A stretch of DNA of 64,000 bases from the IMG/VR virus record IMGVR_UViG_3300028275_000006, positions 148,543-212,542 of that record; one strand, written 5' to 3'. The translations under genes and the position numbers were made by a program. Each line of letters begins with the position of its first letter. Position 1 is the stretch's first letter. Of the stretch, positions 6,475 to 54,751 are shown piece by piece. The notes beneath the pieces are model-generated. The model had not been told where the DNA came from, did no database searches, and was given only the letters and a program-made list of their open reading frames with translations.

Positions 6475-6614
6475 GATCTTGGTGCCGCGCCGTTTCGAGT
6501 AGCAGGATCCCATGAGTGGCAACCCTTGGGTCGTCCGTCTTTGTCGCAAAATGCTATTCCGGCGCAGCCTGCTAAGGTTGTAATAATTGCTAATATTAAG
6601 ATGTTTTTCAGCAT
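6471..6614 (-). CDS. 47-aa lipoprotein (MLKNILILAIITTLAG-C...) missed by the ORF track
   Basis: Lipobox LAGC; TAAATA 4 nt upstream; ATGA overlap with next gene. Confidence 0.75.
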   Translation of the reverse strand: MLKNILILAIITTLAGCAGIAFCDKDGRPKGCHSWDPATRNGAAPRS

Positions 6615-6632
6615 CCAATATTTAGTTAGATT

Positions 6633-9026
6633 TTATTGGCGAACAACTGTGCTACAACCCGCTGGATTTGTACAACTTTGAATGATGCTAAATGATTTGC
6701 CGCCTGTTTGTTGCAGGTCAACACTGGCTGGGCCACCTGCGTTAGTTACATCAATAACTGCTCTGTTAGCAGTATTTCCTGTTTGTGTCACTAGTGCTGA
6801 GTTGTTATTTCCTGTTAGTGTAATATCAGCGAAATGGCCAGCACCGCCAGACTGTGTAGTGTTTACAGTATTAATATCGCCTGTAACTTTACTGAACAAT
6901 ATGTGATTACCGGTTTGTGTATGATTTACAGTATTACCATTTCCTTGTATTTTAGTTTCAGCATAATTTGAACCACTAGCATTTGACTGATTAGTAGTTA
7001 TGTTATTGCCCCACCCAGGCACTTCTTGCTTTAAGTAGTTACTGCCAGTTTGAGTATTATTAACAATATTGTTGTTTCCTTCTAAGGTAAATTCGATTTT
7101 GTTCTTAGTACCACTTTGTGTAATAGTTACATTATTGTTAGTACCGTATGTTTGTGTGATGTACAATTCGTTATTGTAGTTTTGTGTACCGTTGTTCCAA
7201 GTATTAATTCTAGTTTGTTTAACATCTATATCTGCTGGAGGAACGTATGAGCCACCGCTACCTATAACTTGATCACCAGGCGCATTTGTTTGTGTAATTG
7301 TTCCACCTTCAACTACTGGTCCTAATAAAACTGTTGTACCCGACACGTCAACTACTGCGCTGTTAGAATAAACAAATCCACTAGTGTCAATTGTATTTGT
7401 TTCAGTAATCCACCCTGTAGTAAATGCAGAGTTAGGTACGTTCATACGGCCTGCACCGTAGTCCCATTGAAAACGTAGTCCATAGCCGCCGGTGTCGTTC
7501 CAGTACCATGCTTCAAAATTATAAGTCTGTCCTGCTACTATGTCTATCCAGCCAGACGCTGTATAGCCACCTATACTCTGAAGTTGGAATGTAGATCTAT
7601 CGTTGATAACTGTTTGTCCGTTTACACTCATAACAAATCCGTCATCGCTGTTGCTATAGAAGTATAATCTATATACAGTACCTGCAGGATAATTTTGTGT
7701 CGTCGGAGCAGTAATCGTTCCGTTGAATCTAACTAAGGTACCAGTGTCCATATTTGGAAAACTGCCGTTAGTCGGAACATAAACTCCGTTACTAGTTGTA
7801 CCAATACTAACAGGCTGTCCACCAGGTGGCATATCAGGTACACGATATGGCCCTAACCAGTTTTTAATACAACCTAACCAACCGCAGTTATAAGTGTAAG
7901 GATCGAATTTGTAGACTTTATAGTTTAATCCCTGCTGTATGTTTTGTGTTGTAGTTGTTGCTGTGCCGTTTGCTTCTATGGTGCTGCCATTAACGCCGGT
8001 TGTAGTAACTGTATTAATTGGTGTTGTAGTTGTTGTCAGAACACCGTTTACAATTTTTGTAGTTACTACGTTAGACGCAACCTTAGTTTGATATACTGCT
8101 TCAGTACCATTTGTACTTGTGCTAGTTCCGTCGCTGTAAGTTGTTGTAGTTACAGGTGTGCGATAAACAGTAGTTGTATTACCATTAACCACAGTTCTAG
8201 TTGTATAAGTTACACTAGTTCCTGTTACTGTAGGAGTCGGAGCAGGAGCCGCACCGGCAGTTGCGCCCGTGCCAGCATTGGTCACTGACATTGTGTTATT
8301 ATATCCACCAGCAGTACCACTAGTAGTACCACCAGTAGCACTAGGGCCGCCACCGTTAGCGTTAGCAACTAAGCCAACTGTACTCGAACCAGGCACTCCA
8401 TCGCTGTTAACGATACAGGCATTTGATCCGCCCCATGCACCTTGACAAGCACCGAACCCTGGATTTGATACCCAACCTTGTGCTGTTATATTATTATAAG
8501 GCCCAAACTCCGGGTTATACAATAAGTTGCCGCCGCCATTAAGTTGGAATGTAGGAGCACGATACCAAGGACCATAATCACCTGCCCAGTAACTTCCATC
8601 AATACCGTACATACTGACTGTGGCATAGGCTACTTGGCTTGCTTGTGCCGCAGTAAGCGTTGCACTGATAGTTACTGTAGTCCAAGGTACCGCAGTATCA
8701 ATACAAGGATTACCACACACAGCATTTGGGTTTGGTAAGTTAGCAGAGTTAGTTGAGTTTACGCTAGTGATTAATCCACCACTGCTGTTATAGAACTGTA
8801 TCTTTACGTTAGCCGTATCACTTTGTCCTGCACGGCCGCCGCCGTTGTGTGCTAGTACACTCATTGTAAATGTACCGCCTTGTTGCATATTACTATCAAA
8901 CACTACTTGTTGACTAATTGTAGTAGTAACATAAGCAGTAGCAATAGCATTATAAGTCACAGCCTGACTATGTGCGCTAATGCACACAGTTAAAAACACA
9001 AGGAACTGTAATAAACGTTTTATCAT
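6633..9026 (-). CDS. secreted 797-aa protein: FBA-like lectin domain, Thr-rich linker, PA14 domain, C-terminal curlin-like repeats
   Basis: Signal peptide; GIDGSYWAGDYGP; SDDG...GQTYNFEAWY; repeated (I/V)xQxGxxN. Confidence 0.75.
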   Translation of the reverse strand: MIKRLLQFLVFLTVCISAHSQAVTYNAIATAYVTTTISQQVVFDSNMQQGGTFTMSVLAHNGGGRAGQSDTANVKIQFYNSSGGLITSVNSTNSANLPNPNAVCGNPCIDTAVPWTTVTISATLTAAQASQVAYATVSMYGIDGSYWAGDYGPWYRAPTFQLNGGGNLLYNPEFGPYNNITAQGWVSNPGFGACQGAWGGSNACIVNSDGVPGSSTVGLVANANGGGPSATGGTTSGTAGGYNNTMSVTNAGTGATAGAAPAPTPTVTGTSVTYTTRTVVNGNTTTVYRTPVTTTTYSDGTSTSTNGTEAVYQTKVASNVVTTKIVNGVLTTTTTPINTVTTTGVNGSTIEANGTATTTTQNIQQGLNYKVYKFDPYTYNCGWLGCIKNWLGPYRVPDMPPGGQPVSIGTTSNGVYVPTNGSFPNMDTGTLVRFNGTITAPTTQNYPAGTVYRLYFYSNSDDGFVMSVNGQTVINDRSTFQLQSIGGYTASGWIDIVAGQTYNFEAWYWNDTGGYGLRFQWDYGAGRMNVPNSAFTTGWITETNTIDTSGFVYSNSAVVDVSGTTVLLGPVVEGGTITQTNAPGDQVIGSGGSYVPPADIDVKQTRINTWNNGTQNYNNELYITQTYGTNNNVTITQSGTKNKIEFTLEGNNNIVNNTQTGSNYLKQEVPGWGNNITTNQSNASGSNYAETKIQGNGNTVNHTQTGNHILFSKVTGDINTVNTTQSGGAGHFADITLTGNNNSALVTQTGNTANRAVIDVTNAGGPASVDLQQTGGKSFSIIQSCTNPAGCSTVVRQ

Positions 9027-10129
9027 TTTTGTATCAAGGTAATAATAGTATTACCTCCCTGATTTATTCTGTTCTTAAATTCTAAATTGCCCTGTGTTTG
9101 TAATATTGTTGAGTTTTGTGTGAGTGGTGTTTTAACACATTGTATGTCAGCACCGTTGTCGCGACAGAGTTCAACACTCATATCATCTTTGTAGGCTATA
9201 ATGCCACTGGACTTTTTATAGTCTGGTAGCACAGGATCTACAGGATCTAAAAACTTTTGATCCAGTATGTTTCCCACAATGTCGAATAAGTTAGCAAGGA
9301 AATCATTAGACAAAAAGTTTTTGGCTAACTTATCTTCATAAATCATATTGGCCTGCATATCTAAATAATTCTCCAAACCTTTCTCTTTTAAAAAGTCAAA
9401 GTCTAAAGCATTAAATGTTCTCTGTTGTTCTTGTTGTGCTTGTTTGACTTCGCGCGGAGGACTGACAATTAACATATTGCCAATGGCCATTTCACTTAGA
9501 TTTAATACTTTAGGCGGTGTAGGAGGTTGTGTTCTACTTTGAACTTTAGTTACTTGGAAGGGTTGATTTAGTATTACAGTACCTACATCATTGCTAACTT
9601 CAATACTGCCAGTCTTACAGTTAGTTTCAATATCTCTAACTGAGCGTGTTGGTCTATCATTAGGACAACTAGGTAAAAGAATAATTGTACTTTCGCCTAG
9701 CTCGTCTACAGTGGCAGTAAAGTCAGTACCGCGTACAGCAACAGTAGCACTAGGAGTAGAAAGGGCCACATTCTGAGGCGAATTCTTAGCAATCTGTCCA
9801 GACGCATAACGAACTGTGCCAAGAGCAATCTTAGCACCTAGTTTACCCGCCTTACTTTTTGGATCATAAACGAAATCATCAATTACAAGTTTAGAATTTT
9901 CATTGACTTGGACTTTAGTATCGTCCTCAAATGTTATCCCCACCTTGCCCTGCTGGGTCTTGATCGCATCGTTCATTTCCACTCCAGTCCCTTTCGACGC
10001 CGTTAGTGTCGAATTCTGTCTCTGGATAGTCGGGGGTGTATTGATTTGTTCCGTTACTTTGCCTATCGCGGCGTAGGCCAACGATGTACTCAGCAACGGA
10101 ACGCATAATACTACCATCCATAATTTCAT
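9023..10129 (-). CDS. periplasmic FecR-domain protein
   Basis: Signal peptide; GVEMNDAIKT, ITFEDDTKVQVNENSKLVID, TPSATVAVRGTDF. Confidence 0.85.
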   Translation of the reverse strand: MKLWMVVLCVPLLSTSLAYAAIGKVTEQINTPPTIQRQNSTLTASKGTGVEMNDAIKTQQGKVGITFEDDTKVQVNENSKLVIDDFVYDPKSKAGKLGAKIALGTVRYASGQIAKNSPQNVALSTPSATVAVRGTDFTATVDELGESTIILLPSCPNDRPTRSVRDIETNCKTGSIEVSNDVGTVILNQPFQVTKVQSRTQPPTPPKVLNLSEMAIGNMLIVSPPREVKQAQQEQQRTFNALDFDFLKEKGLENYLDMQANMIYEDKLAKNFLSNDFLANLFDIVGNILDQKFLDPVDPVLPDYKKSSGIIAYKDDMSVELCRDNGADIQCVKTPLTQNSTILQTQGNLEFKNRINQGGNTIITLIQK

Positions 10130-10138
10130 GGAACCCTC

Positions 10139-17024: not shown

Positions 17025-17571
17025 AGTGTGGAACTATATCCATCATTTGATCAAAGAATTTTGCCGCAAAATCAAAACATACTCTTGCTTCATCTGCTAG
17101 ACTATCATCTAGTTTTGCACGAATTGCTTCTTTGATCTTTTCAGGTTCGTCTCCAAACTGATAGTATTTGCCACTGCCTGGAACTCTTTTAGCAATCATT
17201 TGACCGCCTGATAAATCTCCCATGTGACGTACATAAATGTGTGCCATCAACTTTTTAGGATCATCTTTGATGCTGAGAATATATTTGATATATTCATCCA
17301 CTACCGGACACATTTTTGGTTCTTCAGGATTGTCTGAGCCCCATAGTTCTATGAAGTCAGATAAAATTGCAGGTGCTCTGCGTATCTCTGGTAGACCGGA
17401 AAGTAATCCATGTGGCATAGCACAGACTTCTAAAATCTCATACATTGGATGTTGATTTTTTAGATATGTTGCGTATAGTTTAGGATTTACATTTCCTGAA
17501 AATAAGACTTTAACAAAAGGCCTTGTTTCTGCTCTGCGATGTTGCTCGTGTGTAAGTTCTTTTAGACTCAT
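17017..17571 (-). CDS. hemO: heme oxygenase
   Basis: LKELTHEQHRRAE proximal His; AHIYVRHMGDLSGGQMI distal helix. Confidence 0.92.
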   Translation of the reverse strand: MSLKELTHEQHRRAETRPFVKVLFSGNVNPKLYATYLKNQHPMYEILEVCAMPHGLLSGLPEIRRAPAILSDFIELWGSDNPEEPKMCPVVDEYIKYILSIKDDPKKLMAHIYVRHMGDLSGGQMIAKRVPGSGKYYQFGDEPEKIKEAIRAKLDDSLADEARVCFDFAAKFFDQMMDIVPHYE

Positions 17572-17876
17572 TCGGAATCCACTTTAATTTGTAATGGGAA
17601 GCCTGCTTGACGTGCAAGGTGTGTTGCCTCAACACCTTTCTGCTCGGCGATCTCGTAGGTATAAACACCTACTACTGCTGAACCTTCATTGTGTACAGTT
17701 AATGTAATCTGTTCAGCATTTTCTCTGGAGTGCTTAAACACAGTCATTAGTAATTCAATAACAAAGTCGATTGGAGTTTTGTTATCATTTAAAAACAATA
17801 CCTTGTAACGCTTAGGTTCAGTGATATCGATTTTAATCTTTTCGTCAATTTTAATTTCGGTGTCTACAGTTGGCAT
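17568..17876 (-). CDS. clpS: ClpS N-degron adaptor
   Basis: YKVLFLNDNKTPIDFVIELL, VHNEGSAVVGVYTYEIAE, FPLQ. Confidence 0.92.
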   Translation of the reverse strand: MPTVDTEIKIDEKIKIDITEPKRYKVLFLNDNKTPIDFVIELLMTVFKHSRENAEQITLTVHNEGSAVVGVYTYEIAEQKGVEATHLARQAGFPLQIKVDSE

Positions 17877-17898
17877 ATTGGCCCTCCATTCTTAATGG

Positions 17899-17925: not shown

Positions 17926-17931
17926 GATTTT

Positions 17932-18435: not shown

Positions 18436-18444
18436 ATAACGAGT

Positions 18445-20685: not shown

Positions 20686-20687
20686 TT

Positions 20688-20921
20688 TTAATACATTTTT
20701 TTAGGTAGTTGTTGTTTACGCAGTTCTTTTTGCCAACGATTCTTAGCCGCAGACTTTGCTCGCTTACGAGCAGTTGTTGGCTTTTCATAGAACTCGCGAT
20801 CTCTTAGTTCCTGCAATAATCCGCTATCCTGTATTTTCTTTTTGAAACGGCGTAGAGCTCTTTCAACGGGTTCACCGTCTTTTACAGTAACTCCACTACC
20901 ACGTAGTTGTTTATCCCTCAT
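20688..20921 (-). CDS. rpsU: ribosomal protein bS21
   Basis: VTVKDGEPVERALRRFKKK, REFYEKPTTARKR. Confidence 0.93.
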   Translation of the reverse strand: MRDKQLRGSGVTVKDGEPVERALRRFKKKIQDSGLLQELRDREFYEKPTTARKRAKSAAKNRWQKELRKQQLPKKMY

Positions 20922-21303
20922 TATCTTCCTCTGTTAATTTTGGAAAGTCGTAAAAACGATTTTTATTTATTAAATCCCAAGGTGCTTGCATATTCGTGCA
21001 TCTATAGTATGTAGTAGGAATACTCAAAATGTAAGCAAAGAACTGGCTTATACTTACAGGACTATTATCCATATCTATAAGAATAGTGTCGACGGAATTG
21101 GCTACGCTGAGTAACCATGCTATGTTGTCTTCGTCGCCTGTGTACAGATATATGTTTAAGTGTTCACTACAGTCTAAAGCATATTCCTGTACAGCGTCTT
21201 TGAGTGTGTCGCTAGGAGTAATAACTAGCATTGTTTGACTTTGATCGTATATACGATCCGGAGCGGTTATGATTTTGATTTTCTTCTTTGTATTCTCTGC
21301 CAT
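20911..21303 (-). CDS. hypothetical protein
   Basis: ORF track, coupled to rpsU. Confidence 0.7.
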   Translation of the reverse strand: MAENTKKKIKIITAPDRIYDQSQTMLVITPSDTLKDAVQEYALDCSEHLNIYLYTGDEDNIAWLLSVANSVDTILIDMDNSPVSISQFFAYILSIPTTYYRCTNMQAPWDLINKNRFYDFPKLTEEDNEG

Positions 21304-21340: not shown

Positions 21341-22708
21341 TTACTCCTTGGTCTTGGTCACTTGTTGATTCTGTTCCTTCACTATGTAGGTTGTCTTTTT
21401 TTTTGAACTGTCAGGTTCTATGACTTCTGTAAGATCGGGCTTGTATCTGTCTCCTGTTACTTCGGATATATAATCCCCAGGACGCTCGTCCAAAGTTTCC
21501 TTCCAAGGTAACTCTTCAATTACACCAGATTCTTTTAATTTTTCCTGATGCTTAATAGTGTCATCTGGATTCTGTTCCTTCCAAATGCGCTTGGCTTCTT
21601 TTTCTTTTTCAAGTTCGCGTTCTGCTTCTTCAATCATTTTATTCCATTGCTCTAGTCCAATGTCTTCAACAATGTCCTTTTCTTCTTCTGGAATATAAGA
21701 TCTAGCATGTTCTACTATTTCAGCATCTTCATCGTCGGCATCTTCTACTTGATAGTTTTGGATGTCTGCGTGTTTAGGATACATCCAACCAATTGGATGC
21801 GGATCAGCACTTTCTTTAATCTGTTCGACTTGCTCTTCGACTAATGGACCATCGTCTGCTTCGTATTTAGGTTCATTCTGTGCATCAATTGGAGTTGGCA
21901 CAATTGGCGCTGGCTCAGGTTCTTCCTCTTCTTGTTTCCTAAACCATTGGAAACTATATTGGCTAGCCAGCAACAAAATAACAGCCAATGGGTCAAATAC
22001 TATAACAATAATAATGATTACCCAGGTAACTGCTTTTTCTAAAATCGTTTCATTTGTCTCGCCATAGACAAACGATGCGATATACTTAATTGGACCAACT
22101 TCGGCTTCGACCTTGCGTACCTCGGCGGCAATAGGCGCACGGGCATCATTAAGTTCCGCGATAGACTTCTGCGACTGTGATATTTCTGCTTGAAGTCTAG
22201 CACGTTCTTTCTGCTGGGACTTACGCAAAGCCACAGCCTTGTCGGCACCTTTTTCATCTGCTGAGCGACCCAATACTTGGTCCACTCCTTCATCCATCTG
22301 TTTAAGTGCTTTACGGTTTGCTTCAATATTTTCTTTTTCGGTTTTGATCTTTTCATCATAGATAGCAATCTTACTTTGAACATCGCCGCTTACTAGACTT
22401 TGGTCACTGTGTGCTTTGGATAAGAAACCAAAAATACCCATAGAGGTAATAAGCATTAGTATAGCAATAGCGGATAATAGATAACCTCTAATAAAGTTAG
22501 GTGCCCTGGACCAATTTTGTTTTAGCCAAACAGTTGCGGCTAACTTACTAACTTCTAGGGCTACACCCATAACAATGATAGGAATAACAGCCGCAGAGAA
22601 AATGGCCATTAGGCCCGCTACGCTGTAATAAATGGCTACAGCGGATATGGTTAATCCGCTGAACAATGTTAGCCAAGCAATTAGTTTGTCACTAGTTTGA
22701 TATCGCAT
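21341..22708 (-). CDS. membrane protein: 3 TM, coiled coil, TM, acidic cytoplasmic tail
   Basis: Hydrophobic N-terminus, heptad-rich middle, FDPLAVILLLA, Glu-rich C-terminus. Confidence 0.75.
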   Translation of the reverse strand: MRYQTSDKLIAWLTLFSGLTISAVAIYYSVAGLMAIFSAAVIPIIVMGVALEVSKLAATVWLKQNWSRAPNFIRGYLLSAIAILMLITSMGIFGFLSKAHSDQSLVSGDVQSKIAIYDEKIKTEKENIEANRKALKQMDEGVDQVLGRSADEKGADKAVALRKSQQKERARLQAEISQSQKSIAELNDARAPIAAEVRKVEAEVGPIKYIASFVYGETNETILEKAVTWVIIIIVIVFDPLAVILLLASQYSFQWFRKQEEEEPEPAPIVPTPIDAQNEPKYEADDGPLVEEQVEQIKESADPHPIGWMYPKHADIQNYQVEDADDEDAEIVEHARSYIPEEEKDIVEDIGLEQWNKMIEEAERELEKEKEAKRIWKEQNPDDTIKHQEKLKESGVIEELPWKETLDERPGDYISEVTGDRYKPDLTEVIEPDSSKKKTTYIVKEQNQQVTKTKE

Positions 22709-22718
22709 AATCTATTAT

Positions 22719-23177
22719 TTATTGGCGAGCAAAAGTCCAAAACTGACTATCTAATGTATAGCAACCAACTTCTTCATATTCTCTACTTTTGCCTTGTTTA
22801 TAAACTAGAGTAATTAATTTACGGCATACACCGCCTTGAACATGCCAAGACAATACCGGTTTAATTTTACCCCACGATTCTTCTGTGTTGTTATACCACT
22901 CCATAACCTGTCCATCTGGTACAGATTCTAATGTTAGTATAACAGCATTTGTGTGTCTACGTCTATCTTCTTTACTCAATGCGCCATCCCAACTTTTAAT
23001 TAGGTTGGCAAAAACACTAACAGCACTTCCAGGATAATCGTAATCATTTCTCACACCTCCGGTTGCACTTAATGGAACACGGAGATCTGAAGCCTGACTA
23101 GTTTGACAGATTAGCAGGGTCAGAAATGTAAACGTAATGACCTTGACGATGTGTTTCGCAAACATAGTTTCTTCCAT
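22719..23177 (-). CDS. secreted protein similar to RT0821/17-kDa surface antigen C-terminal domain
   Basis: Signal peptide; WYN...GKIKPV...GVCR...EVGC. Confidence 0.55.
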   Translation of the reverse strand: MEETMFAKHIVKVITFTFLTLLICQTSQASDLRVPLSATGGVRNDYDYPGSAVSVFANLIKSWDGALSKEDRRRHTNAVILTLESVPDGQVMEWYNNTEESWGKIKPVLSWHVQGGVCRKLITLVYKQGKSREYEEVGCYTLDSQFWTFARQ

Positions 23178-26619: not shown

Positions 26620-26705
26620 GTCGTGTCTCCGTTGTAGTAATATTTATCGCACAATTATCGTAGTTTAGTATTATTTTTGGTAGTTGTCAACCGATAAATA
26701 TGAAT

Positions 26706-27023
26706 ATGCCAGCACTAGCAAGATTAACAGATTTGGGAGAAGGAAAATGTCCTTTGCACTCCCCTAGCCCACCGGTAGATTATACTACCACACACATTGC
26801 CGGATGCAGTACTGTGTTTACAAACAACCTAGCACAACTAGTAGCCACTAGAGATCCTGGCGAACAATCCTGCGGACATACTAGCCAAACACTTACTGGA
26901 TCTGCTACTGTGTTTGCAGAAAACTTGCCTGTGCATCGTATTGGAGATACAGGCCTTGGACAAGGCGGAGATACATATACAACTATCACCGGAAGTTCTA
27001 ATGTGTTTAATGACGGAGCGTAA
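26706..27023 (+). CDS. PAAR-repeat spike tip protein (T4 gp5.4-like); likely start 26706
   Basis: PALARLTD, GCSTVFTN, CGH, GSATVFAENLPVHRIGD, GSSNVF. Confidence 0.85.
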   Translation: MPALARLTDLGEGKCPLHSPSPPVDYTTTHIAGCSTVFTNNLAQLVATRDPGEQSCGHTSQTLTGSATVFAENLPVHRIGDTGLGQGGDTYTTITGSSNVFNDGA

Positions 27024-34960: not shown

Positions 34961-35653
34961 TTAGGGTAGTCTATAATATTGTGCCACCCTGTCACACCAG
35001 CGATTTGTCCAGTAGTCAAAATCTGAAGGTTCTAATATAAACTCTTGATATTCGTAGTCTTTGCTACACATTAAAATAACACCCTTGCGTATATTAGTGC
35101 CGTGTATTTCGTTGTGTGCTAGAGCGTAGGCTGTTAACTGTAAAAAGTAATCCTCGATCCACTCAAGTTTCTTGGGTTTGTTAGTCTGCTTAAAGTCTAG
35201 GATACTTTCGTCGCCTTCGTGTATGCCTACACAGTCTGTGGTTCCTGCATATAATTCTGGGAAATACAAAGGAACTTCACTGCCCCATACTTCCTTAATT
35301 TTAGGGAATCCTTGTGCAATAACAATCTTAGCCATGTCCAGGCTTTGTTGTGCATAAGGGTTACTCACACTTTCTTTTAGTGGCTCACCTTTAATGTAGT
35401 TTTCTAGGTATGTGTGCATCCTAGTTCCGCGACTGGCGGCTTCGGTGGTAATCTGTTGTGCTTTTTGTTCGCCAACAGCCTTTTTCCAATTAGCCAGTGC
35501 TTCACGGGCTTCTGCTGGTTTAGTTTTATCTAGGATTGTTGTTACACTGGGAACTTTAAACCCATCTGGGCAAGCATATAAACGCTTGCCAGTGGATTCA
35601 TCTCTATTAAGTTTAGTGTAGGTATATTTTGGCTGTAATAATGTCGTAGTCAT
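34961..35653 (-). CDS. PD-(D/E)xK exonuclease
   Basis: PSVTTIL, RGTRMHTYLE, EVPL, YAGTTDC, ILDFKQT, QLTAY. Confidence 0.88.
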   Translation of the reverse strand: MTTTLLQPKYTYTKLNRDESTGKRLYACPDGFKVPSVTTILDKTKPAEAREALANWKKAVGEQKAQQITTEAASRGTRMHTYLENYIKGEPLKESVSNPYAQQSLDMAKIVIAQGFPKIKEVWGSEVPLYFPELYAGTTDCVGIHEGDESILDFKQTNKPKKLEWIEDYFLQLTAYALAHNEIHGTNIRKGVILMCSKDYEYQEFILEPSDFDYWTNRWCDRVAQYYRLP

Positions 35654-35659
35654 GACGCA

Positions 35660-35688
35660 ATTATAACATTATGTTTACAGCCTGTCAA
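35660..35688 (-). promoter_or_regulatory. consensus sigma70 promoter for the exonuclease
   Basis: TTGACA-17-TATAAT. Confidence 0.8.
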
Positions 35689-37831: not shown

Positions 37832-38556
37832 AGTTGTCTCTGCTCTATACTTAATTCTTGATCTTGTAGTGTGTTAATATGATCATTGAGTTTTTCGATC
37901 CATCCCTGACTGCGTAGCATTTTGAATACTAAATTCTCTGTGCCAAATTCTCCATCACGGGCTAGACCTGCCTGTCGCATACGTTTTATGTCTTTCCACA
38001 TATCTTCTGCTAGGGCAATGTCATTGTCGCCTAACACTACAATAATTCTATCTCTGTAGTTCTTGTACTTATCCTTAACATCCTGTGTGTTAATATCTAC
38101 ATCTTGTCGTGTGGGTTTTTCAATCCAACGACTCCTTAACACGCTGTAAATTCCCAAACTGTGGTGCTCTTGGTTTACGTCCTGGGCATATAGCTCTACG
38201 TCTATACCTCGCACTTTGATGTCATGTCTAGCATTATATACATTTTTCTTGGCATCCAGCAGTTCGCGGAATTCTGGCTTGTCTGGTACAGCAACAACAA
38301 TGTGCAGATCCAAGTCACTCTGTGGAGTATAACTGAATGCCGCGTTACTGCCGCTGACTGTGATATCTTTAACGTCTAACTCAACTCCTATGAAATCTTT
38401 AAAGTGGCGAGCAATATCAATCAACGCTCTGCGTACTTCCCCGTGCATCATACCCGACTCAGTGAACAATTTAGGGTTCAGTATGTCGTGGAAGACCACA
38501 GCATTACTAATGCTAAAGTCGGGACTAGGAATACCAGTTAATTCTGTGACGTTCAT
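37828..38556 (-). CDS. Pol-beta-superfamily nucleotidyltransferase; likely start 38556
   Basis: ITVSGSNA...SDLDLHIVV (GS..DxD) plus later VELY. Confidence 0.75.
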   Translation of the reverse strand: MNVTELTGIPSPDFSISNAVVFHDILNPKLFTESGMMHGEVRRALIDIARHFKDFIGVELDVKDITVSGSNAAFSYTPQSDLDLHIVVAVPDKPEFRELLDAKKNVYNARHDIKVRGIDVELYAQDVNQEHHSLGIYSVLRSRWIEKPTRQDVDINTQDVKDKYKNYRDRIIVVLGDNDIALAEDMWKDIKRMRQAGLARDGEFGTENLVFKMLRSQGWIEKLNDHINTLQDQELSIEQRQL

Positions 38557-38563
38557 ACTATAT

Positions 38564-38989
38564 TTATTCGTCGTCCGACGCAAAAATTACTGTGTTCTTG
38601 TGCTGTGGAGATTTAGTATCCAGCAGAGCACGTTCCAAGTCTGCTGTTTCGTTCAAGTCTACAATCATTGGAATGAAGTTTAAATCTTCAATTAACAGAC
38701 CTGCATTGTTTCCTTCTGCATCTTTGTATCCGTCAGCATACTCTATGCTAAACTTAAATGTCCAGATATTGTGCTGGCCTTTGTAGGCAGATCCAAATCC
38801 ATAGTCCTTGACATCATCTTCCCTAAGTTTGGGACTGTTGATGTAGTGCGGGTTTACACGCATACCTATGGTTTGAATCAACATTGTAAAGTTTTGATTT
38901 TGGAAATAGTCTATTTCCTTGCCCGGCTCTTTTCTTCGCTGTCCAGTCTCAGTAATATCTACTAACGTCTGTATGGTAAACTCTTTCAT
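38564..38989 (-). CDS. hypothetical protein; likely start 38989
   Basis: TAAATA 5 nt upstream of ATG 38989. Confidence 0.65.
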   Translation of the reverse strand: MKEFTIQTLVDITETGQRRKEPGKEIDYFQNQNFTMLIQTIGMRVNPHYINSPKLREDDVKDYGFGSAYKGQHNIWTFKFSIEYADGYKDAEGNNAGLLIEDLNFIPMIVDLNETADLERALLDTKSPQHKNTVIFASDDE

Positions 38990-39008
38990 GTGAGTATTTA
39001 ACAGCCAC

Positions 39009-39034
39009 AAAAAAAGCCCTAGTTAAACTAGAGC
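39009..39034 (-). terminator. intrinsic terminator
   Basis: GCTCTAG-TTTAA-CTAGGGC-T7. Confidence 0.8.
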
Positions 39035-39053
39035 TTTAATGTATCCTGTTGGT

Positions 39054-41960: not shown

Positions 41961-43371
41961 ATACTTGAGCGGCAAATATTGTGCCGCCTATCTTTTCGCC
42001 GCCAGCGGCTATCATCTTATCTCTAAATCCAATGTTAGTGCCTGCACCGTAGGCCGCACTAGAAGCCGCTGTAAAGTATTTGAGATTTGTTGGAACTTGC
42101 GGAAGAATATTAATTGCGCCATCTACAATGTTAGCCAATTGTCTATCAGTTGGGCCACGTGTAAAGTTAGCACTTGGGCCCGGATCAAATCTTGTACCAG
42201 TAACTGCTTGGAACTGATTTGGAGCTCTTAACACACTGATAACATTGTCGCCCCAATTACCTGTGCGTGTTCTGTTTAGGATAACGCCCATAACATAGGC
42301 TTGTTCTTTACTGTTATTGCTTGCTTCAGCAGTTGTAGCACGTAACAAGTAATTCCATTCTTTGTCGTCCATTGGACGTCCTAGATACTTTTCTGCTGTT
42401 GCTCTTGCCTTTTGCGTACTCTCGGTGCTAGTTAAGGCTGCAACTTCTTCAGCACCTCTGCTATAGTCTAATGACTTAACATCCTTGTTAGTACTCTTTG
42501 TTAAAGTAGCCAATACTTCAGGCTTGGCTTTGAGCATGGCGTTCATTTTATCCGCAGTTTGCTGATTAACAATTCCTGTTGCTTCTAAGCCATTCTTCTC
42601 TTGGAAGGTTTTGATAGCACCTGTTGTTTCTTTACCTTGAATCCCATCAACACCATATTTAGGTAAAGGTACGCCCAATGCTTCTAATGCCTTTTGTGCA
42701 TCTGCAATTAATGGGCCACGTTTGCCGTCTGGAACTTCTACACTAAATGGAACTGCCGTAGCATCTTTTTCTTTATTGTCTGCTGTATCTTTACTAGCAG
42801 GTGCGGCAATAGAAGAACCTGCTTGAAATAGTTTACTGTATCCGTTAAACGGGTGTATGCCATCGCCCTTGGCTATGTTTGGATCAAAGGTGTTTAGTGA
42901 ACCTAAAAACTTTGCTCCTGCGCCTGCGGCAATGCCGGATAGTTTTTGATTTGCGCCTGTGTAATCTACAGTCCATTGTTTACCATTAGTAAACTTTGTA
43001 GGCTTTTGCAAAGGTGTTTTGCCATCAGCAACACCAACTAGTGCTACCGATGCTCCTGCATCTTTTAACGCTTTAATCTGTTGACTAATTGGACCAAAGT
43101 TTTCCGATTGAATCTGTGTTCCGTCTTCTGTTTCTACTTTACCACTGTTAGCGGCTCCACTACTTAAAATAACAATAGCACCTTTTGCTTTGCCACTTTT
43201 AACAAAGGGCGTTACAAGATTTTGTAGAACAAATGTAGTGTTTTTTCCAGGATTAGTGTATTCTTTGCTAACGCCACCGGCGCCAGCAATGCCATTGGCA
43301 ATACTGTCTCCAATTACGTAAACGTTGGATTTTGATTCAAAAAGTTTGGATAAGAATTCTTTGGCTCTCAT
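41959..43371 (-). CDS. MRAKEF-family fusion: SGNH hydrolase, PG-binding domain, SleB-like cell wall hydrolase
   Basis: VIGDS...DGIHP; VDGIQGKETTGAIKTFQ..NGLEATG; TTAEA...VILNR...NQFQAV. Confidence 0.82.
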   Translation of the reverse strand: MRAKEFLSKLFESKSNVYVIGDSIANGIAGAGGVSKEYTNPGKNTTFVLQNLVTPFVKSGKAKGAIVILSSGAANSGKVETEDGTQIQSENFGPISQQIKALKDAGASVALVGVADGKTPLQKPTKFTNGKQWTVDYTGANQKLSGIAAGAGAKFLGSLNTFDPNIAKGDGIHPFNGYSKLFQAGSSIAAPASKDTADNKEKDATAVPFSVEVPDGKRGPLIADAQKALEALGVPLPKYGVDGIQGKETTGAIKTFQEKNGLEATGIVNQQTADKMNAMLKAKPEVLATLTKSTNKDVKSLDYSRGAEEVAALTSTESTQKARATAEKYLGRPMDDKEWNYLLRATTAEASNNSKEQAYVMGVILNRTRTGNWGDNVISVLRAPNQFQAVTGTRFDPGPSANFTRGPTDRQLANIVDGAINILPQVPTNLKYFTAASSAAYGAGTNIGFRDKMIAAGGEKIGGTIFAAQV

Positions 43372-43462
43372 AGTCTTATTTATGTAAACTTCTCTGTTGG
43401 GTTAGGCGTTATTATATTATAGCACTTAAAAAGGTGGATTACTATGTTGATGAGGACCAATT

Positions 43463-51102: not shown

Positions 51103-51309
51103 TCAGTGTTCGCTACGTGTAAGTTTTTGAATAACAGGACTGTCTTTGCCCTGTTCTGCTTTGTCCAGCTCTAAATGCTGTTGTAATGGCGGAACCATTA
51201 CAGGATCTGGGTCTTTTTCTTCGGCATCGTGGCTTTGTTTATCACTAGAGTTATCGTCTAGTGCATCAATTATATCTGCTAGTGATCTTAGGAATTCTGC
51301 GGCTCTCAT
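51103..51309 (-). CDS. small acidic protein starting MRAAEFL; likely start 51309
   Basis: TAAATA 5 nt upstream of ATG 51309. Confidence 0.65.
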   Translation of the reverse strand: MRAAEFLRSLADIIDALDDNSSDKQSHDAEEKDPDPVMVPPLQQHLELDKAEQGKDSPVIQKLTRSEH

Positions 51310-51317
51310 ACAATTAT

Positions 51318-51959
51318 TTAGTTCCACGCAACCATTTTAAATCTTTCTTCAGGAATGCCGAAATATTCGCATTTCCAGCGACTCTGTGCAAAGAAATCCA
51401 AGTGATGCCAAGAATTTTTATGTGCTAGTATCTGCTTACCAGCATCTTCCCAATCTATAGCCAACAACACAGGTTCTATAGTTTCACGTACAGATTCAAT
51501 TTCCGCATAGTCAAAACTATCCCATTCCCAGTGTAGGACTTCAAGTGCGTTGCCCTGTTGATCTACATAGTCCATGCTAAAATCTAATCCCCATTTGGGT
51601 CTTAGAGCTATAACTTTATGTATTAAGGGTAAACTTTTTGCCCAGTACTGTAGTTCTTCTAAGGCGGCTCCTGCGTAACCTTTACGTTCGAATAATAGAC
51701 TGTGATTTAATACACTGCCTTCTATTGTATGTTCCTGAGTAAACCACGGCTGTTTAAGTGCTGTGCGATGTTCCCTATGCTTCTTTGGTTTGGTCCAATT
51801 ACTGTAGGCATAGTGCTTTTCGAGATCAGTTAGGTCATAACCGTTCTGATCAAATAATGCAACATCCTCTACTGTTGGGATATAAACTATCTTTTCTACA
51901 GGTTTATCCCAATAACCGTTGGCGTCAAATTTGTTATCAGTTAGAGCTACGTTGGACAT
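51318..51959 (-). CDS. conserved hypothetical protein
   Basis: ORF track; Trp/Tyr-rich. Confidence 0.7.
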   Translation of the reverse strand: MSNVALTDNKFDANGYWDKPVEKIVYIPTVEDVALFDQNGYDLTDLEKHYAYSNWTKPKKHREHRTALKQPWFTQEHTIEGSVLNHSLLFERKGYAGAALEELQYWAKSLPLIHKVIALRPKWGLDFSMDYVDQQGNALEVLHWEWDSFDYAEIESVRETIEPVLLAIDWEDAGKQILAHKNSWHHLDFFAQSRWKCEYFGIPEERFKMVAWN

Positions 51960-52100: not shown

Positions 52101-53723
52101 TTAATCCTCGCTCCATACTAATCCTGCAATACAAGGACTAATACTGTTTGTGCTTTTAACAGCAATACTTAACCAACTACCTGGCGGAACTGTGATACGA
52201 TAAGCACTTAGGTCAATGTTAATAGTTCCGTTAATACCACAAAAGCCTGTATATATAGGAGTATCTATAGTGTTATCAAATGTTCCTGTGACTGTACTAC
52301 GAACTTCGTTGCAACGAGTAATAGCATAGTATTCGTGTGTTCCTGAAAAACTACTTGGTTCAAAGTATAAGTAAACTTCCACAGGGTCTGTGCTCTGTAC
52401 TGACAGGCTCATGCTTTTGACAATGGCTTCTTTGGCATTGATGATATAGTTGCCGTTGTTAGCACCTGCTAATCCGTTAGTGACTACAGCATTTTTAATA
52501 GTCATTATATGATGTATGATATCTTTTGCTAGGCCTGTTTTGCTTGTTGAATAAGAGCGTGTGAGTTCGTTTAGGTGAATTGTACCTTCGACAGCGGCAT
52601 AGATACTAGCACCATATACACTTATGTCTGTGGTATTAGTTGTGTTAACAGCGTTGTAGGTAATCTTAAAACTTGGATTAGCAGTATGAGGAGTAGTATG
52701 TTGATTAACATAGTGTTCGCGATGTACATAGATCATTGTTCCCGAATCTTGATCTTCTATAGCATAACTGATTACACCTGCGCCTAACCAGCGCATAGCA
52801 ATTTGGTAGACATTAAGTTTAGTATGATCTAAAGTCATACCACTAGGATTAGAGTCAATGGAATTGCTGCCATCTAGTTTGTCAATGTTCCAATCTTCTT
52901 GATAGGTCCAGTTATCTGTTTGTGCCAACCCTGCTTGTCTTACAGTAAATGTAGCAGTAGCATTGCCTGTACTGCTAAAACTAAATGTGCCATTCATCGG
53001 GCCTAGACTAGGTGCCAACCACATCATAGCGCCATCTGTTTGTTGCATCAACCAACCACCATATCCACCTACACGGTTAACAATTTCTGTAATTGCATGT
53101 GCGGCTGTGCCCGATGTCAGTGCTACAGTATAGGCCGTTCCGTTAAGAGTGATAGTAGCAGTCTGCCCAGCGTTGGGTGCCGTGTTTATAATTAATGTTA
53201 AGATTGTGGCCTTACCGCCTGTGCTTCGAACAACTCCAAAACGATTGCCATTCCAGCCAAAGCCCACACGATTTTCTTGATTGGCTAAACCAGCAAACTG
53301 ACTACTGCCTGCAACGCCCGTAGTAAAACCTGCGGTCATACGACTTATAATGCCCTGTCCTGGACGATAGCGAACAAAACGTTTGCTACGCAATACACCA
53401 TAACCACCTGCTGTGGTTCCTGAGTGTACTCTAAACATCTGATCTACTGAACCGGCACTAGATCCTGTACCGTTTGTGTATGTTTGTATAACATCTGCTG
53501 TGGCGCCATATATACCATCTAATTGTATAACAGCAGTAGGAGTGATTGCTAATGGTTCGCCAAAAGCAGATACCTGACCGGCAACACTAGGCCCTGACAA
53601 TTTAGCCGCTACACGAATCATTGGCTTACCAGCCAAGTCGTACTCCATGGCCTTGTGTAGGTTTAGAAGGTTTGGTTCGTCCGAGTGGACGTAGTCTGTC
53701 GAGTTAGGATTTCTTACACCCAT
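52101..53723 (-). CDS. virion structural protein
   Basis: AFGEPL, SKRFVRYRPGQG, DWNIDKLDG beta-rich pattern recalled from T4-like virion proteins. Confidence 0.6.
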   Translation of the reverse strand: MGVRNPNSTDYVHSDEPNLLNLHKAMEYDLAGKPMIRVAAKLSGPSVAGQVSAFGEPLAITPTAVIQLDGIYGATADVIQTYTNGTGSSAGSVDQMFRVHSGTTAGGYGVLRSKRFVRYRPGQGIISRMTAGFTTGVAGSSQFAGLANQENRVGFGWNGNRFGVVRSTGGKATILTLIINTAPNAGQTATITLNGTAYTVALTSGTAAHAITEIVNRVGGYGGWLMQQTDGAMMWLAPSLGPMNGTFSFSSTGNATATFTVRQAGLAQTDNWTYQEDWNIDKLDGSNSIDSNPSGMTLDHTKLNVYQIAMRWLGAGVISYAIEDQDSGTMIYVHREHYVNQHTTPHTANPSFKITYNAVNTTNTTDISVYGASIYAAVEGTIHLNELTRSYSTSKTGLAKDIIHHIMTIKNAVVTNGLAGANNGNYIINAKEAIVKSMSLSVQSTDPVEVYLYFEPSSFSGTHEYYAITRCNEVRSTVTGTFDNTIDTPIYTGFCGINGTINIDLSAYRITVPPGSWLSIAVKSTNSISPCIAGLVWSED

Positions 53724-53746
53724 AGAATAACTCCGTTATTTAGAAA

Positions 53747-54037: not shown

Positions 54038-54120
54038 TTGTATTTCCTTTGATATTTAAAATCTGTTTGATTAGAATACTGATTTCTAATCAGGATTCCA
54101 TAATATTTGTAACTGTAATA

Positions 54121-54136
54121 TATTTATCGTTAAATA
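54121..54136. promoter_or_regulatory. back-to-back late promoters
   Basis: TAAATA on minus (54121-54126) and on plus (54131-54136). Confidence 0.55.
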
Positions 54137-54142
54137 TTGCTT

Positions 54143-54751
54143 ATGAAACCTTTGTTGATGATACACGAAGTCCGTGAATGGATGTTTGATTTACCCTTAA
54201 ATGATTACATCTTGACCTTTGATGACGGATTGTACAGCCAGTATTACTACAACGATTGTTTCAAACAATTAACTACGCAGAGAATATACTACATCAGTTC
54301 AGGCATTGTTAGCAGTGGTTGTCAAAGCCTAGATTTTCCAAACTGTGTTCAAGCACATAAAAAAGCAAGATTGGGCGACTTTGAAGATTATATGACTGTG
54401 GAACAGATCAAAGAGCTCATGCAAGACCCTAATGTTATCATTGGCGCACACAGCCACAGTCACACTAGGTTAGATAACTTTACTAGTCTAGCAGAAAAAG
54501 TTGCTTATATTAATCAAGACACTGAACAGATGATACAATGGTTTGAAACAAATCTAGGATTTAAACCAACGCACTTCTGTTTCCCTTACAACGAAGATCC
54601 ACACGGACTGTACAAAGGACTAGTTAAAAAGTTTGGGATTACTGACTGCGCTGGATCCGGTCGAATACCAATCGAAATGCTTCGGCATAAGGAAGGCCAA
54701 CCTGATAGCCTCGATACTTTGCCAGCGTGGTCATTGCCTCGATACTCCTAG
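54143..54751 (+). CDS. polysaccharide deacetylase (NodB-like)
   Basis: LTFDDG, IGAHSHSH, FCFPY. Confidence 0.85.
   Translation: MKPLLMIHEVREWMFDLPLNDYILTFDDGLYSQYYYNDCFKQLTTQRIYYISSGIVSSGCQSLDFPNCVQAHKKARLGDFEDYMTVEQIKELMQDPNVIIGAHSHSHTRLDNFTSLAEKVAYINQDTEQMIQWFETNLGFKPTHFCFPYNEDPHGLYKGLVKKFGITDCAGSGRIPIEMLRHKEGQPDSLDTLPAWSLPRYS

What the first reader, a model, noticed from the sequence alone, without database searches (positions are those of the whole stretch)
6614..54143. Repeated TAAATA-N4-6-ATG starts with no SD: putative leaderless late mRNAs in a bS21-encoding phage
Seen: late-promoter hexamer 4-6 nt before the start codon with no SD at ATG 6614, 26706, 38556, 38989, 43371, 51309 and 54143, whereas other late genes have normal SD leaders. 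Known: T4 late transcripts start a few nt downstream of TATAAATA; bS21 affects SD/anti-SD use and phage bS21 genes have been linked to late infection. Inferred: the start codon lies at or near +1, giving a leaderless class of late genes; the phage bS21 (20688..20921) may tune leaderless versus SD-led initiation.
Basis: partly seen in the sequence, partly recalled or inferred. Interest (0 to 1): 0.7.

Follow-up and report, generated by a model that had tools for sequence, protein, structure and literature searches.

The report
Promoters abutting start codons: leaderless phage genes
In this river-water jumbo phage and its relatives, about a quarter to a third of the predicted late promoters (TAAATA) and several early promoters sit 4-7 bases before an ATG that has no ribosome-binding site; this conserved layout implies messages translated without a leader, but no link to the phage's ribosomal protein bS21 was shown.

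Summary
All seven sites carry TAAATA, 4-6 nt, then ATG, with no Shine-Dalgarno (SD) sequence. An eighth in-window site (ATG 22708) and four outside were missed.

TAAATA is the rarest of 15 same-composition hexamers (94 copies). 14 of 94 are followed at N4-7 by an ATG opening an ORF, against 1.8% for the other hexamers (p=6e-9). TAAATA-to-start distances are bimodal: 4-7 nt (12 sites, 0 with SD) and 13-30 nt (31 sites, 25 with SD), with none at 8-12.

The contig encodes a gp55-type late sigma factor. T4 geometry puts the A of ATG at +1 when the spacer is 5 nt.

Orthologues in IMG/VR keep the hexamer next to the ATG while the flanks diverge (50/55, 16/16 and 33/36 loci). Three related jumbo genomes and Pelagibacter phage HTVC008M show the same enrichment. 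T4, Syn9, PA5oct, Melnitz and Mosig do not.

Consensus sigma-70 promoters also abut ATGs at 6-7 nt, so the layout is not specific to late genes.

Metatranscriptome contigs are compatible with this but too coarse to map 5' ends.

The bS21 idea is untested. bS21 lies in a conserved operon behind one such gene, but it also occurs in phages that lack the class.

The parts
6612..6624 (-). TAAATA-N4-ATG. Start of a 47-aa lipoprotein-like ORF (6614..6471) that overlaps the start of the next gene (MRAKEF..., ATG 6474).
22706..22721 (-). The TAA of the motif is the stop of the upstream gene. It heads the operon that contains bS21.
   Evidence: 50/55 non-redundant orthologous loci keep TAAATA at N4-8.
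26695..26708 (+). TAAATA-N5-ATG of a PAAR-like spike-tip protein, in a divergent intergenic region.
   Evidence: Relative L211 keeps TAAATA-N5-ATG.
38554..38566 (-). TAAATA-N4-ATG of a 242-aa protein (phrog_36119). The TAA is the stop of the upstream gene.
   Evidence: 16/16 non-redundant orthologous loci keep TAAATA close to the ATG (15 at N4, 1 at N6), mostly with the upstream stop elsewhere.
38987..39000 (-). TAAATA-N5-ATG of a 141-aa protein.
   Evidence: Conserved in L360.
39013..39037 (-). Intrinsic-terminator-like hairpin (11-bp stem plus T run) about 12 nt upstream of the TAAATA at 39000. It insulates gene 38989 from upstream transcription.
   Evidence: Fold -20.2 kcal/mol, z=-4.5. Conserved in L360.
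43369..43382 (-). TAAATA-N5-ATG of a 470-aa cell-wall hydrolase (PG_binding_1 + Hydrolase_2) with an MRAKEF N-terminus. It lies in what appears to be a divergent promoter region; the opposing + strand ORF at 43463 is a weak call.
   Evidence: A 278-kb relative has TAAATA-N7-ATG, and more distant relatives have a GGAG leader. RNA contigs end at 43356/43356/43384, followed by a gap up to 43436-43441.
51307..51320 (-). TAAATA-N5-ATG of a 68-aa protein (MRAAEF...). The TAA is the stop of the upstream gene.
   Evidence: One RNA contig (51144-51346) runs through the site.
54131..54145 (+). TAAATA-N6-ATG of a polysaccharide deacetylase. It sits back to back with a minus-strand TAAATA (54126..54121).
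   Evidence: Relative L353 keeps the paired motifs while the rest of the spacer has diverged. RNA contigs start at 54164 and 54166.
53721..53742 (-). Example of the leadered class: TAAATA-N13 (with GGAG)-ATG of a virion structural protein. Thirteen further in-window sites have spacers of 15-30 nt, at ATG 1284, 12909, 16320, 17876, 26619, 32832, 34927, 36901, 39677, 40482, 44634, 51063 and 54037.
35651..35688 (-). TTGACA-N17-TATAAT-N6-ATG: a consensus sigma-70-type promoter abutting the start of a 230-aa gene with no SD.
20688..20921 (-). Phage bS21 gene. It has its own GAGG SD and a TAAATA 42 nt upstream (20969..20964).
   Evidence: phrog_21469, E=6e-20

Best explanation
**What the contig is.** It is part of a jumbo phage genome (212.5 kb, CheckV about 55% complete) from river metagenomes. 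Its late sigma factor is nearest to that of Pseudomonas phage PA5oct.

**How the late genes are read.** The phage transcribes late genes with a gp55-type sigma factor that recognises a bare -10-like box with an invariant core, TAAATA. About 43 such boxes precede genes, and they fall into two designs.
- In about 31 cases the box lies 13-30 nt (mode 21-22) before the ATG. That gives a leader of about 16 nt that holds a GGAG SD.
- In about 12 cases the box lies 4-7 nt before an ATG with no SD. Transcription then starts on or within about 2 nt of the A of the start codon, and the message is leaderless or nearly so. It would be translated through its 5'-terminal AUG.

**Early genes use the same design.** Consensus sigma-70-type promoters also abut ATGs at 6-7 nt.

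**Shown versus inferred.** Shown: the motif statistics, the two discrete spacing classes, the absence of SD, the late sigma gene, and conservation across orthologues and genomes. Inferred: the exact 5' ends, recognition of TAAATA by the gp55-like factor, and translation of the leaderless transcripts by host ribosomes.
For: **Motif statistics**
- TAAATA is depleted. 14/94 copies are followed by an ORF-opening ATG at N4-7, against 1.8% for permuted hexamers.
- Spacing is bimodal with an empty 8-12 nt gap.
- SD core: 0/12 in the short-spacer class against 25/31 in the long-spacer class.

**Transcription machinery and geometry**
- A gp55-family sigma is present. It is also found in four related records and in PA5oct.
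- In T4 the box spans -13..-6 (PMC1524935).
- The genes behind short spacers are late-type: baseplate wedge, PAAR, tail-fibre-like, cell-wall hydrolase.

**Conservation in orthologues**
- The hexamer is kept next to the ATG in 50/55, 16/16 and 33/36 non-redundant IMG/VR loci.
- In the flanking columns the commonest base reaches only 0.3-0.9 (mostly 0.3-0.7).
- The few orthologues without it carry an AGGAG leader instead.

**Replication in whole genomes**
- 37/162, 24/156 and 28/158 in three related records of 278-364 kb, one of them complete (p of 1e-14 or lower).
- All three show the same bimodal spacing for both TAAATA and sigma-70-type promoters.
- HTVC008M has 17 annotated CDS starts with TAAATA at N4-8, 12 of them exactly N5.

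**Insulation from upstream transcription**
- Four short-spacer genes sit in divergent promoter regions.
- One lies directly behind a terminator hairpin.
- Read-through from upstream cannot feed these five genes.

**RNA**
- Metatranscriptome contig ends lie 15-23 nt inside the ORF at 43371, 38989, 38556 and 54143.
- There is a coverage gap over the promoter at 43371 in three runs.
Against: - No 5' end was mapped at nucleotide resolution. Only low-depth assembled contigs without strand information were available.
- One contig reaches 13 nt upstream of ATG 43371. One deep run (X19) spans that site. One contig runs through the site at 51309.
- With a 4-nt spacer, strict T4 geometry would put +1 on the U of AUG. 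The polymerase would have to start one base earlier than in T4.
- In three window sites the TAA of the motif is the upstream stop codon, so termination-reinitiation could contribute there.
- Homologues of gp33 and gp45 were not found. The contig is incomplete and the queries were distant.
- Whether the unidentified host translates leaderless mRNA efficiently is unknown.
Confidence: 0.7

Rival explanations
1. The hexamer next to the ATG acts in the RNA, not the DNA. It would be an A/U-rich, SD-independent ribosome-recruiting element (for example a bS1 binding site) on longer transcripts that start further upstream.
For: - The element sits where an SD would sit, and these genes have no SD.
- One RNA contig extends 13 nt upstream of ATG 43371, and one runs through the site at 51309.
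Against: - The identical hexamer occurs 13-30 nt upstream of 31 genes that do have an SD, where it cannot be a ribosome-binding site.
- It matches the T4-type late box, and a gp55-type sigma is encoded.
- Consensus sigma-70 promoters show the same abutting geometry. That geometry is natural for a transcription start rule, not for a ribosome-binding site.
- Gene 38989 has a terminator immediately upstream.
Confidence: 0.1
2. The promoters are real, but the abutting gene is not translated from the transcript they make. The promoter would serve the downstream genes, and the first gene would be made from read-through transcripts by termination-reinitiation.
For: - At 22708, 38556 and 51309 the TAA of the motif is the stop of the upstream gene, with the ATG 7-10 nt after it.
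- A contig crosses the site at 51309.
Against: - 26706, 54143 and contig position 99816 have no co-directional upstream gene, and 43371 appears not to (its opposing ORF at 43463 is a weak call). 38989 follows a terminator.
- In the 242-aa family the upstream stop lies elsewhere in most relatives, yet TAAATA-N4-ATG is kept in 15 of 16 loci (the other is N6).
- Reinitiation does not require the bases ATA after the stop.
Confidence: 0.1
3. The pattern is chance, an artefact of A/T-rich intergenic sequence, or an artefact of start-codon calling.
For: - The hexamer is short and A/T-rich.
- Permuted hexamers containing TAA give 4-6 such sites each.
- The gene calls are home-made.
Against: - Enrichment is eight-fold over 14 permuted hexamers (p=6e-9). 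It is replicated in four other genomes and absent in five.
- The hexamer is kept in 99 of 107 non-redundant orthologous loci.
- In HTVC008M the sites coincide with GenBank CDS starts.
Confidence: 0.03
4. An add-on hypothesis from the first reader: the phage bS21 changes host ribosomes so as to shift the balance between leaderless and SD-led initiation late in infection.
For: - bS21 lies two genes downstream of the conserved short-spacer 455-aa gene in 57/66 loci.
- All five genomes with the class encode bS21.
- E. coli ribosomes lacking uS2 and bS21 favour the lambda cI leaderless mRNA, and bS21 supports the anti-SD (PMC10491246).
Against: - PA5oct, Melnitz and Mosig encode bS21 without the class.
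- Four of the five positive genomes belong to one clade.
- Abutting sigma-70-type promoters imply that leaderless translation occurs before a late bS21 is made.
- From the E. coli data, extra bS21 would be expected to favour SD-led initiation, not leaderless initiation.
Confidence: 0.1

Closest known systems
T4-type late promoters (gp55 sigma; TATAAATA at -13..-6)
   Same: A phage-encoded gp55-family sigma. A single -10-like A/T box with no -35 element. The box lies upstream of structural genes. The core TAAATA is identical. The leadered class looks like ordinary T4-type late transcription units.
   Different: - The two upstream bases of the 8-mer are not conserved (GA is preferred).
- In T4 and cyanophage Syn9 the box is not enriched at 4-7 nt from start codons. 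Here a quarter to a third of the boxes are.
- gp33 and gp45 partners were not found, though the genome is incomplete.
Thermus phage phiYS40 (and P23-45): leaderless middle and late transcripts
   Same: A phage that makes most middle and late mRNAs without a leader from promoters abutting the ORFs. It is reported to alter the host initiation machinery (IF2 up, IF3 down) in a way that favours leaderless translation (PMC3594737).
   Different: - The host phylum (Deinococcus-Thermus) uses leaderless mRNA routinely (PMC12340547).
- Those promoters are read by host sigma A holoenzyme, not by a gp55-type factor.
- No phage ribosomal protein is involved.
- Here only a subset of genes is of this type, and the likely host is a proteobacterium.
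Lambda cI mRNA from pRM
   Same: A phage mRNA that begins with its AUG and is translated without an SD.
   Different: It is a single regulatory gene of a temperate phage. It is not a conserved class of dozens of early and late genes.
Phage-encoded bS21 (HTVC008M and huge-phage metagenomes)
   Same: A bS21 gene of proteobacterial type (REFYEKPTT...RKRAK) in an aquatic phage, placed in a late-type operon.
   Different: No function has been shown here or elsewhere. Its presence does not track the short-spacer class.

Membership tests
T4-type (gp55-dependent) late promoter | The phage encodes a gp55-family late sigma factor. | tested here: met
   The ORF at contig 28-855(-) matches phrog_12791 'sigma factor for late transcription' (E=7e-76) and phrog_234 (E=3e-24). 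It is 31% identical to HTVC008M gp55 and 45% identical to the PA5oct factor.
T4-type (gp55-dependent) late promoter | A TATAAATA-like -10 box without a -35 element, placed upstream of late or structural genes and avoided elsewhere. | tested here: met
   The TAAATA core is invariant, with a preference for GA before it and never a G after it. 53/94 copies lie within 60 nt upstream of starts. It is the rarest of 15 permutations. The genes downstream include baseplate, PAAR, tail-fibre-like and virion proteins.
T4-type (gp55-dependent) late promoter | Transcription starts about 6 nt downstream of the box. | tested here: inconclusive
   Only assembled RNA contigs were available. Their ends lie within about 25 nt of the predicted starts. 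Raw reads were not available.
T4-type (gp55-dependent) late promoter | A gp33 co-activator and a gp45 sliding clamp are present. | tested here: inconclusive
   There were no hits with HTVC008M gp33 or gp45, nor with Pfam PF02916 or PF09116. The contig is about 55% complete, the queries are distant, and the searches had no positive control.
Leaderless mRNA | The 5' end of the transcript is at, or within a few nt of, the start codon. | not testable with these tools
   This is inferred from promoter geometry. Contig ends are compatible with it but too coarse.
Leaderless mRNA | There is no SD, and the start codon is AUG. | tested here: met
   0/12 have an SD core. All 12 sites use ATG. Every orthologue counted also uses ATG, but the orthologue search accepted only ATG.
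Translational coupling (termination-reinitiation) | The stop codon of the upstream gene overlaps or lies a few nt before the start. | tested here: not met
   This holds at 22708, 38556 and 51309 only. It fails at 6614, 26706, 38989, 43371 and 54143, and in most relatives of the 242-aa gene.
Ribosomal protein bS21 | Sequence membership of the S21 family. | tested here: met
   phrog_21469, E=6e-20. tblastn hits to annotated rpsU/S21 genes in Melnitz, PA5oct and others.

The most novel reading that the evidence does not exclude
The phage bS21 is expressed from a late operon that is itself headed by a leaderless-type gene. It would replace or add to host bS21 so that infected-cell ribosomes handle two co-existing classes of phage message (5'-AUG and short SD leaders) differently from host mRNAs. 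If so, this clade and pelagiphage HTVC008M would be natural systems in which a virus-encoded ribosomal protein sets the mode of initiation.
Probability: 0.1. Interest if true: 0.85.

Novelty: new variant of a known kind. Interest (0 to 1): 0.62.

Why it matters
Leaderless mRNAs and gp55-type late promoters are each well known. I found no report that joins them.

Here a quarter to a third of the predicted late promoters, and a similar share of consensus sigma-70-type promoters, are placed so that transcription should start on the start codon. This holds in a widespread clade of aquatic jumbo phages. It also holds, independently, in the cultured SAR11 phage HTVC008M.

If 5' mapping confirms it, three things follow:
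- Leaderless initiation would be a major expression mode for phages of Proteobacteria, not only of Thermus or Actinobacteria.
- Gene callers that require an SD would miss or mis-start such genes. The 47-aa ORF at 6614 and several TTG/GTG-extended ORFs here are examples.
- It would offer a concrete setting for the open question of what phage-encoded bS21 does.

Tried and rejected
**RNA evidence**
- Both read-laying runs were used on metatranscriptome runs that hold the phage. Only Logan contigs at 2-17x were available. They carry no strand information and no read starts, so no TSS could be called.
- The contig ends at 40119 look like assembly-graph breaks, not transcript ends.

**Relationship to T4-like phages**
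- tblastn with HTVC008M capsid, portal, terminase, sheath, gp45 and gp33 against the contig gave nothing.
- The phage is therefore not a close T4-like virus, despite sharing an adenylate-cyclase-like gene with Melnitz and HTVC008M.
- Its late sigma and its gp25-like baseplate wedge protein are closest to PA5oct, Phosso, Atu_ph07 and the Rak2-like phages.

**Searches that prove nothing**
- Pfam searches for the gp45 clamp in the contig were empty but had no positive control. The same holds for a protein search in relatives.

**Ideas rejected**
- That the class is a general property of gp55 phages. T4, Syn9, PA5oct, Melnitz and Mosig show no enrichment. In PA5oct, Phosso and Atu_ph07 the gp25-like gene has TAAATA 23-33 nt upstream with a leader.
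- That bS21 presence predicts the class.

**Literature**
- No paper describing leaderless gp55-type late transcripts was found.
- The Syn9 transcriptome paper (Doron 2016) and the phiYS40 paper are not held, so I could not check them directly.

**Host**
- The DnaK gene is closest to Burkholderiales such as Polynucleobacter and Limnohabitans (72-74% identity). This is only a weak host hint.

Full report
**1. What the window is**

The window is the last 64 kb of a single 212,542-bp IMG/VR virus contig (40% G+C). The contig is linear and CheckV puts it at about 55% complete. It is held in about 18 river metagenomes and in river metatranscriptomes.

Most genes are on the minus strand. The window encodes:
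- bS21 (20688-20921, phrog_21469, E=6e-20)
- DnaK
- a MazG-like protein
- both subunits of ribonucleotide reductase
- PAAR, tail-spike-like and virion proteins
- an adenylate-cyclase-like protein shared with Methylophilales phage Melnitz and Pelagibacter phage HTVC008M

The capsid, portal, terminase and sheath of HTVC008M find nothing in the contig. The late sigma factor and the gp25-like baseplate protein are nearest to the jumbo phages PA5oct, Phosso, Atu_ph07 and the Rak2 group. DnaK is nearest to freshwater Burkholderiales (72-74%), which is a weak hint at the host.

**2. The observation**

All seven sites exist as described.
- Minus strand: 6614 (N4), 38556 (N4), 38989 (N5), 43371 (N5), 51309 (N5).
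- Plus strand: 26706 (N5), 54143 (N6).

ATG 6614 is not the start of the 226-aa ORF that a mechanical ORF list gives there. It opens a 47-aa ORF with a textbook lipoprotein signal. The large ORF really starts further down at an MRAKEF... ATG.

**3. Is it more than chance?**

- TAAATA occurs 94 times on both strands. The other 14 hexamers of the same composition occur 191-408 times.
- 14 of the 94 are followed at 4-7 nt by an ATG that opens at least 40 codons. For the other hexamers the figure is 75 of 4085 (Fisher p=6e-9).
- 53 of the 94 lie within 60 nt upstream of a called start on the same strand.
- The distance from the hexamer to the start is bimodal. There are 12 sites at 4-7 nt, none at 8-12 nt, and 31 at 13-30 nt with a mode at 21-22.
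- A GGAG/GAGG/AGGA core at -18..-4 is present in 0/12 of the short class, 25/31 of the long class and 94/209 of the remaining genes.

So the genome uses SD sequences normally, and the short class is a discrete exception.

**4. What the hexamer is**

The first gene of the contig (28-855, minus strand) is a gp55-family late sigma factor (phrog_12791, E=7e-76). The same protein is present in four related records and in PA5oct.

In T4 the late box TATAAATA spans -13 to -6 (PMC1524935). The six invariant bases here are therefore -11..-6, and +1 is the sixth base after the hexamer.
- A 5-nt spacer puts the A of ATG at +1.
- Spacers of 6 and 7 nt give leaders of 1-2 nt.
- A 4-nt spacer needs a start one base nearer than in T4.
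- The long class gives leaders of about 16 nt, just enough for the SD they contain.

The genes behind the short spacers are late-type: baseplate wedge (gp25-like), PAAR, a tail-fibre-like protein, a cell-wall hydrolase and a polysaccharide deacetylase.

**5. Comparative evidence**

This is the strongest line. Relatives of five short-spacer genes were fetched from IMG/VR and de-duplicated.

| Gene family | Loci keeping TAAATA close to the ATG | Spacing |
|---|---|---|
| 455-aa protein (ATG 22708) | 50 of 55 | N4-8, mostly N6-7 |
| 242-aa protein (ATG 38556) | 16 of 16 | N4 in 15, N6 in 1 |
| gp25-like baseplate wedge | 33 of 36 | N4, N5 or N7 |
| PAAR | 2 of 3 | N5 |
| 470-aa hydrolase (ATG 43371) | 2 of 3 | N5, N7 |

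Further points:
- The five exceptions in the 455-aa family have a different N-terminus.
- Protein identities go down to about 45-50%.
- In the flanking columns the commonest base reaches only 0.3-0.9 (mostly 0.3-0.7).
- Where the hexamer is lost, an AGGAG or GGAG leader stands in its place. The two designs therefore look interchangeable.
- In the 455-aa family the TAA doubles as the upstream stop codon, yet the following ATA is kept throughout. In the 242-aa family the upstream stop lies elsewhere in most relatives.
- For 54143, an 88%-identical relative keeps the back-to-back pair TATTTA-tcgt-TAAATA-ttgctt-ATG while the rest of the intergenic region has diverged.
- For 38989, the terminator hairpin plus TAAATA-N5-ATG is kept.

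**6. Replication in whole genomes**

The same ORF-aware test was run on other genomes.

| Genome | TAAATA followed at N4-7 by an ORF-opening ATG | Result |
|---|---|---|
| Related record, 364 kb (complete, terminal repeats) | 37/162 | p of 1e-14 or lower |
| Related record, 278 kb | 24/156 | p of 1e-14 or lower |
| Related record, 280 kb | 28/158 | p of 1e-14 or lower |
| HTVC008M | 15/186 | p=3e-5 |
| T4, Syn9, PA5oct, Melnitz, Mosig | no enrichment | p=0.3-0.9 |

The three related records show the same two-peaked spacing. In HTVC008M, 17 sites with N4-8 coincide with GenBank CDS starts, and 12 of them are exactly N5 (consensus TAAATA-gtaNt-ATG). In PA5oct, Phosso and Atu_ph07 the gp25-like gene has TAAATA 23-33 nt upstream with a leader.

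**7. Not only late genes**

The contig holds 30 consensus TTGAC-N17-19-TAYAAT promoters. Their distance to the next start is again two-peaked: 6-7 nt (four called genes plus one small ORF, in-window example ATG 35653) against 21-40 nt with an SD. The three related genomes show 5, 9 and 11 such abutting promoters.

For a sigma-70 -10 hexamer at -12..-7, a 6-nt spacer again puts the A of ATG at +1. This part rests on established knowledge of sigma-70 promoters.

**8. RNA evidence**

Two regions were laid against river metatranscriptomes. Only Logan contigs at 2-17x were served.
- **ATG 43371.** It lies in what appears to be a divergent promoter region. Three runs have contigs ending at 43384, 43356 and 43356, and the next contigs begin at 43436-43441. 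A fourth, deeper run spans the site.
- **38989 and 38556.** Contigs end 19 and 17 nt inside the ORFs.
- **54143.** Two runs have contigs that begin 21 and 23 nt inside the ORF.
- **A second minus-strand TAAATA at 54126.** It predicts a start at 54115, and one contig ends at 54099.
- **51309.** One contig runs through the site.

The pattern fits transcripts that begin at or near the ATG, allowing for the usual loss of 15-20 nt at contig ends. It cannot distinguish 0 from about 10 nt, and DNA carry-over cannot be excluded.

**9. Mechanism proposed**

Late in infection the gp55-like factor directs host core polymerase to TAAATA. Where the box lies about 21 nt before the ATG, a short SD-bearing leader is made. 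Where it lies 4-7 nt before the ATG, the message starts with, or within 2 nt of, its AUG and is translated as a leaderless mRNA.

Several of these genes cannot be fed by upstream transcripts. Four sit in divergent regions and one follows a terminator. SD-independent initiation is therefore required for them in any case.

For three genes (22708, 38556, 51309) termination-reinitiation on read-through transcripts may add a second route. I put 0.7 on this reading. The rivals and their weights are listed separately.

**10. The bS21 idea**

- **In favour.** bS21 is genuine. It lies downstream of the short-spacer 455-aa gene in 57 of 66 related loci that have enough flank. In this phage and its nearest relatives it has a further TAAATA 42 nt upstream. 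Late expression is therefore plausible.
- **Literature rationale.** bS21 supports the anti-SD, and E. coli ribosomes lacking uS2 and bS21 favour the lambda cI leaderless mRNA (PMC10491246).
- **Against.** PA5oct, Melnitz and Mosig carry bS21 without the class. The positive genomes amount to only two independent lineages. Early abutting promoters imply leaderless translation on unmodified ribosomes.
- **Weight.** The idea remains an untested add-on, at about 0.1.

**11. Comparison with what is known**

The closest analogue is Thermus phage phiYS40. It makes most of its middle and late mRNAs without leaders and shifts IF2 and IF3 levels (PMC3594737). Its host phylum commonly places -10 boxes next to ORFs (PMC12340547).

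T4-type late promoters share the sigma family and the box, but in T4 and Syn9 the box is not placed next to start codons. I found no paper describing leaderless gp55-type late transcripts. Two key papers were not available to check.

I file this as a new variant of a known kind.

Noticed in passing
window 35651-35688 (-); also contig 127110, 123211, 109803 and 77827 (all -): Consensus TTGACA-N17-TATAAT promoters abut ATGs at 6-7 nt with no SD. This is a leaderless-type class among presumably early genes, and it recurs in three related genomes.
   Followed up: partly
window ATG 6474, 15415, 16320, 43371, 51309 (all -); contig 63177, 64436, 65586: At least five proteins of different length and function begin MRAKEF/MRAAEF, and three more begin MRASDL or MRLR(N/E)LF. 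This resembles the shared N-terminal capsid-targeting peptide of the T4 internal head proteins (from memory). They may be virion-packaged proteins cleaved by the prohead protease.
   Followed up: no
window 6471-6614 (-): A 47-aa ORF with a lipoprotein signal (lipobox LAGC) is hidden inside a mechanically extended 226-aa ORF. It overlaps the true start of the next gene.
   Followed up: partly
window 17568-22721 (-): A conserved module: a 455-aa unknown protein, a 130-aa protein, bS21, a MazG-like protein, DnaK, a 148-aa protein, and a ClpS-like 'ATP-dependent protease' family protein. Several TAAATA boxes and terminator-like hairpins lie between the genes. The 455-aa protein has over 590 relatives in IMG/VR but no Pfam or PHROG family.
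   Followed up: partly
window 41366-41936 (+): Two small ORFs (68 and 88 aa) have near-identical leaders (acacacaaggagaaaatt-ATG). They are among the most deeply covered stretches of the laid region in all four metatranscriptomes. The same 401-405-nt contig (41366/41370-41770) was recovered in each run.
   Followed up: no
window 54121-54136: Back-to-back divergent TAAATA boxes separated by 4 nt (TATTTA-tcgt-TAAATA). The pair is conserved in a relative whose flanking spacer has diverged. The minus-strand gene 54037 thus has two late boxes, at 54058 and 54126.
   Followed up: partly
window 3890-5941 (-): A 683-aa adenylate/guanylate-cyclase-like protein is 46% identical to one in Methylophilales phage Melnitz and 36% identical to one in Pelagibacter phage HTVC008M. 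Otherwise this phage shares little with them.
   Followed up: no
HTVC008M (NC_020484) 6280, 7562, 11972, 16007(-), 18916(-), 18943, 19456, 24712, 31132, 49760, 59714, 75559, 75830, 85575, 109429, 117049, 142360: Seventeen annotated CDS starts in a cultured SAR11 phage have TAAATA 4-8 nt upstream, 12 of them exactly 5 nt, often as TAAATAGTA-N-T-ATG. This makes a tractable system for testing the idea.
   Followed up: partly
whole contig: The record is only about 55% complete by CheckV. A 270-kb IMG/VR contig carries 100%-identical copies of two genes tested (the gp25-like protein and the late sigma factor) and a 364-kb complete relative exists. The true genome is therefore probably well over 300 kb.
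   Followed up: partly
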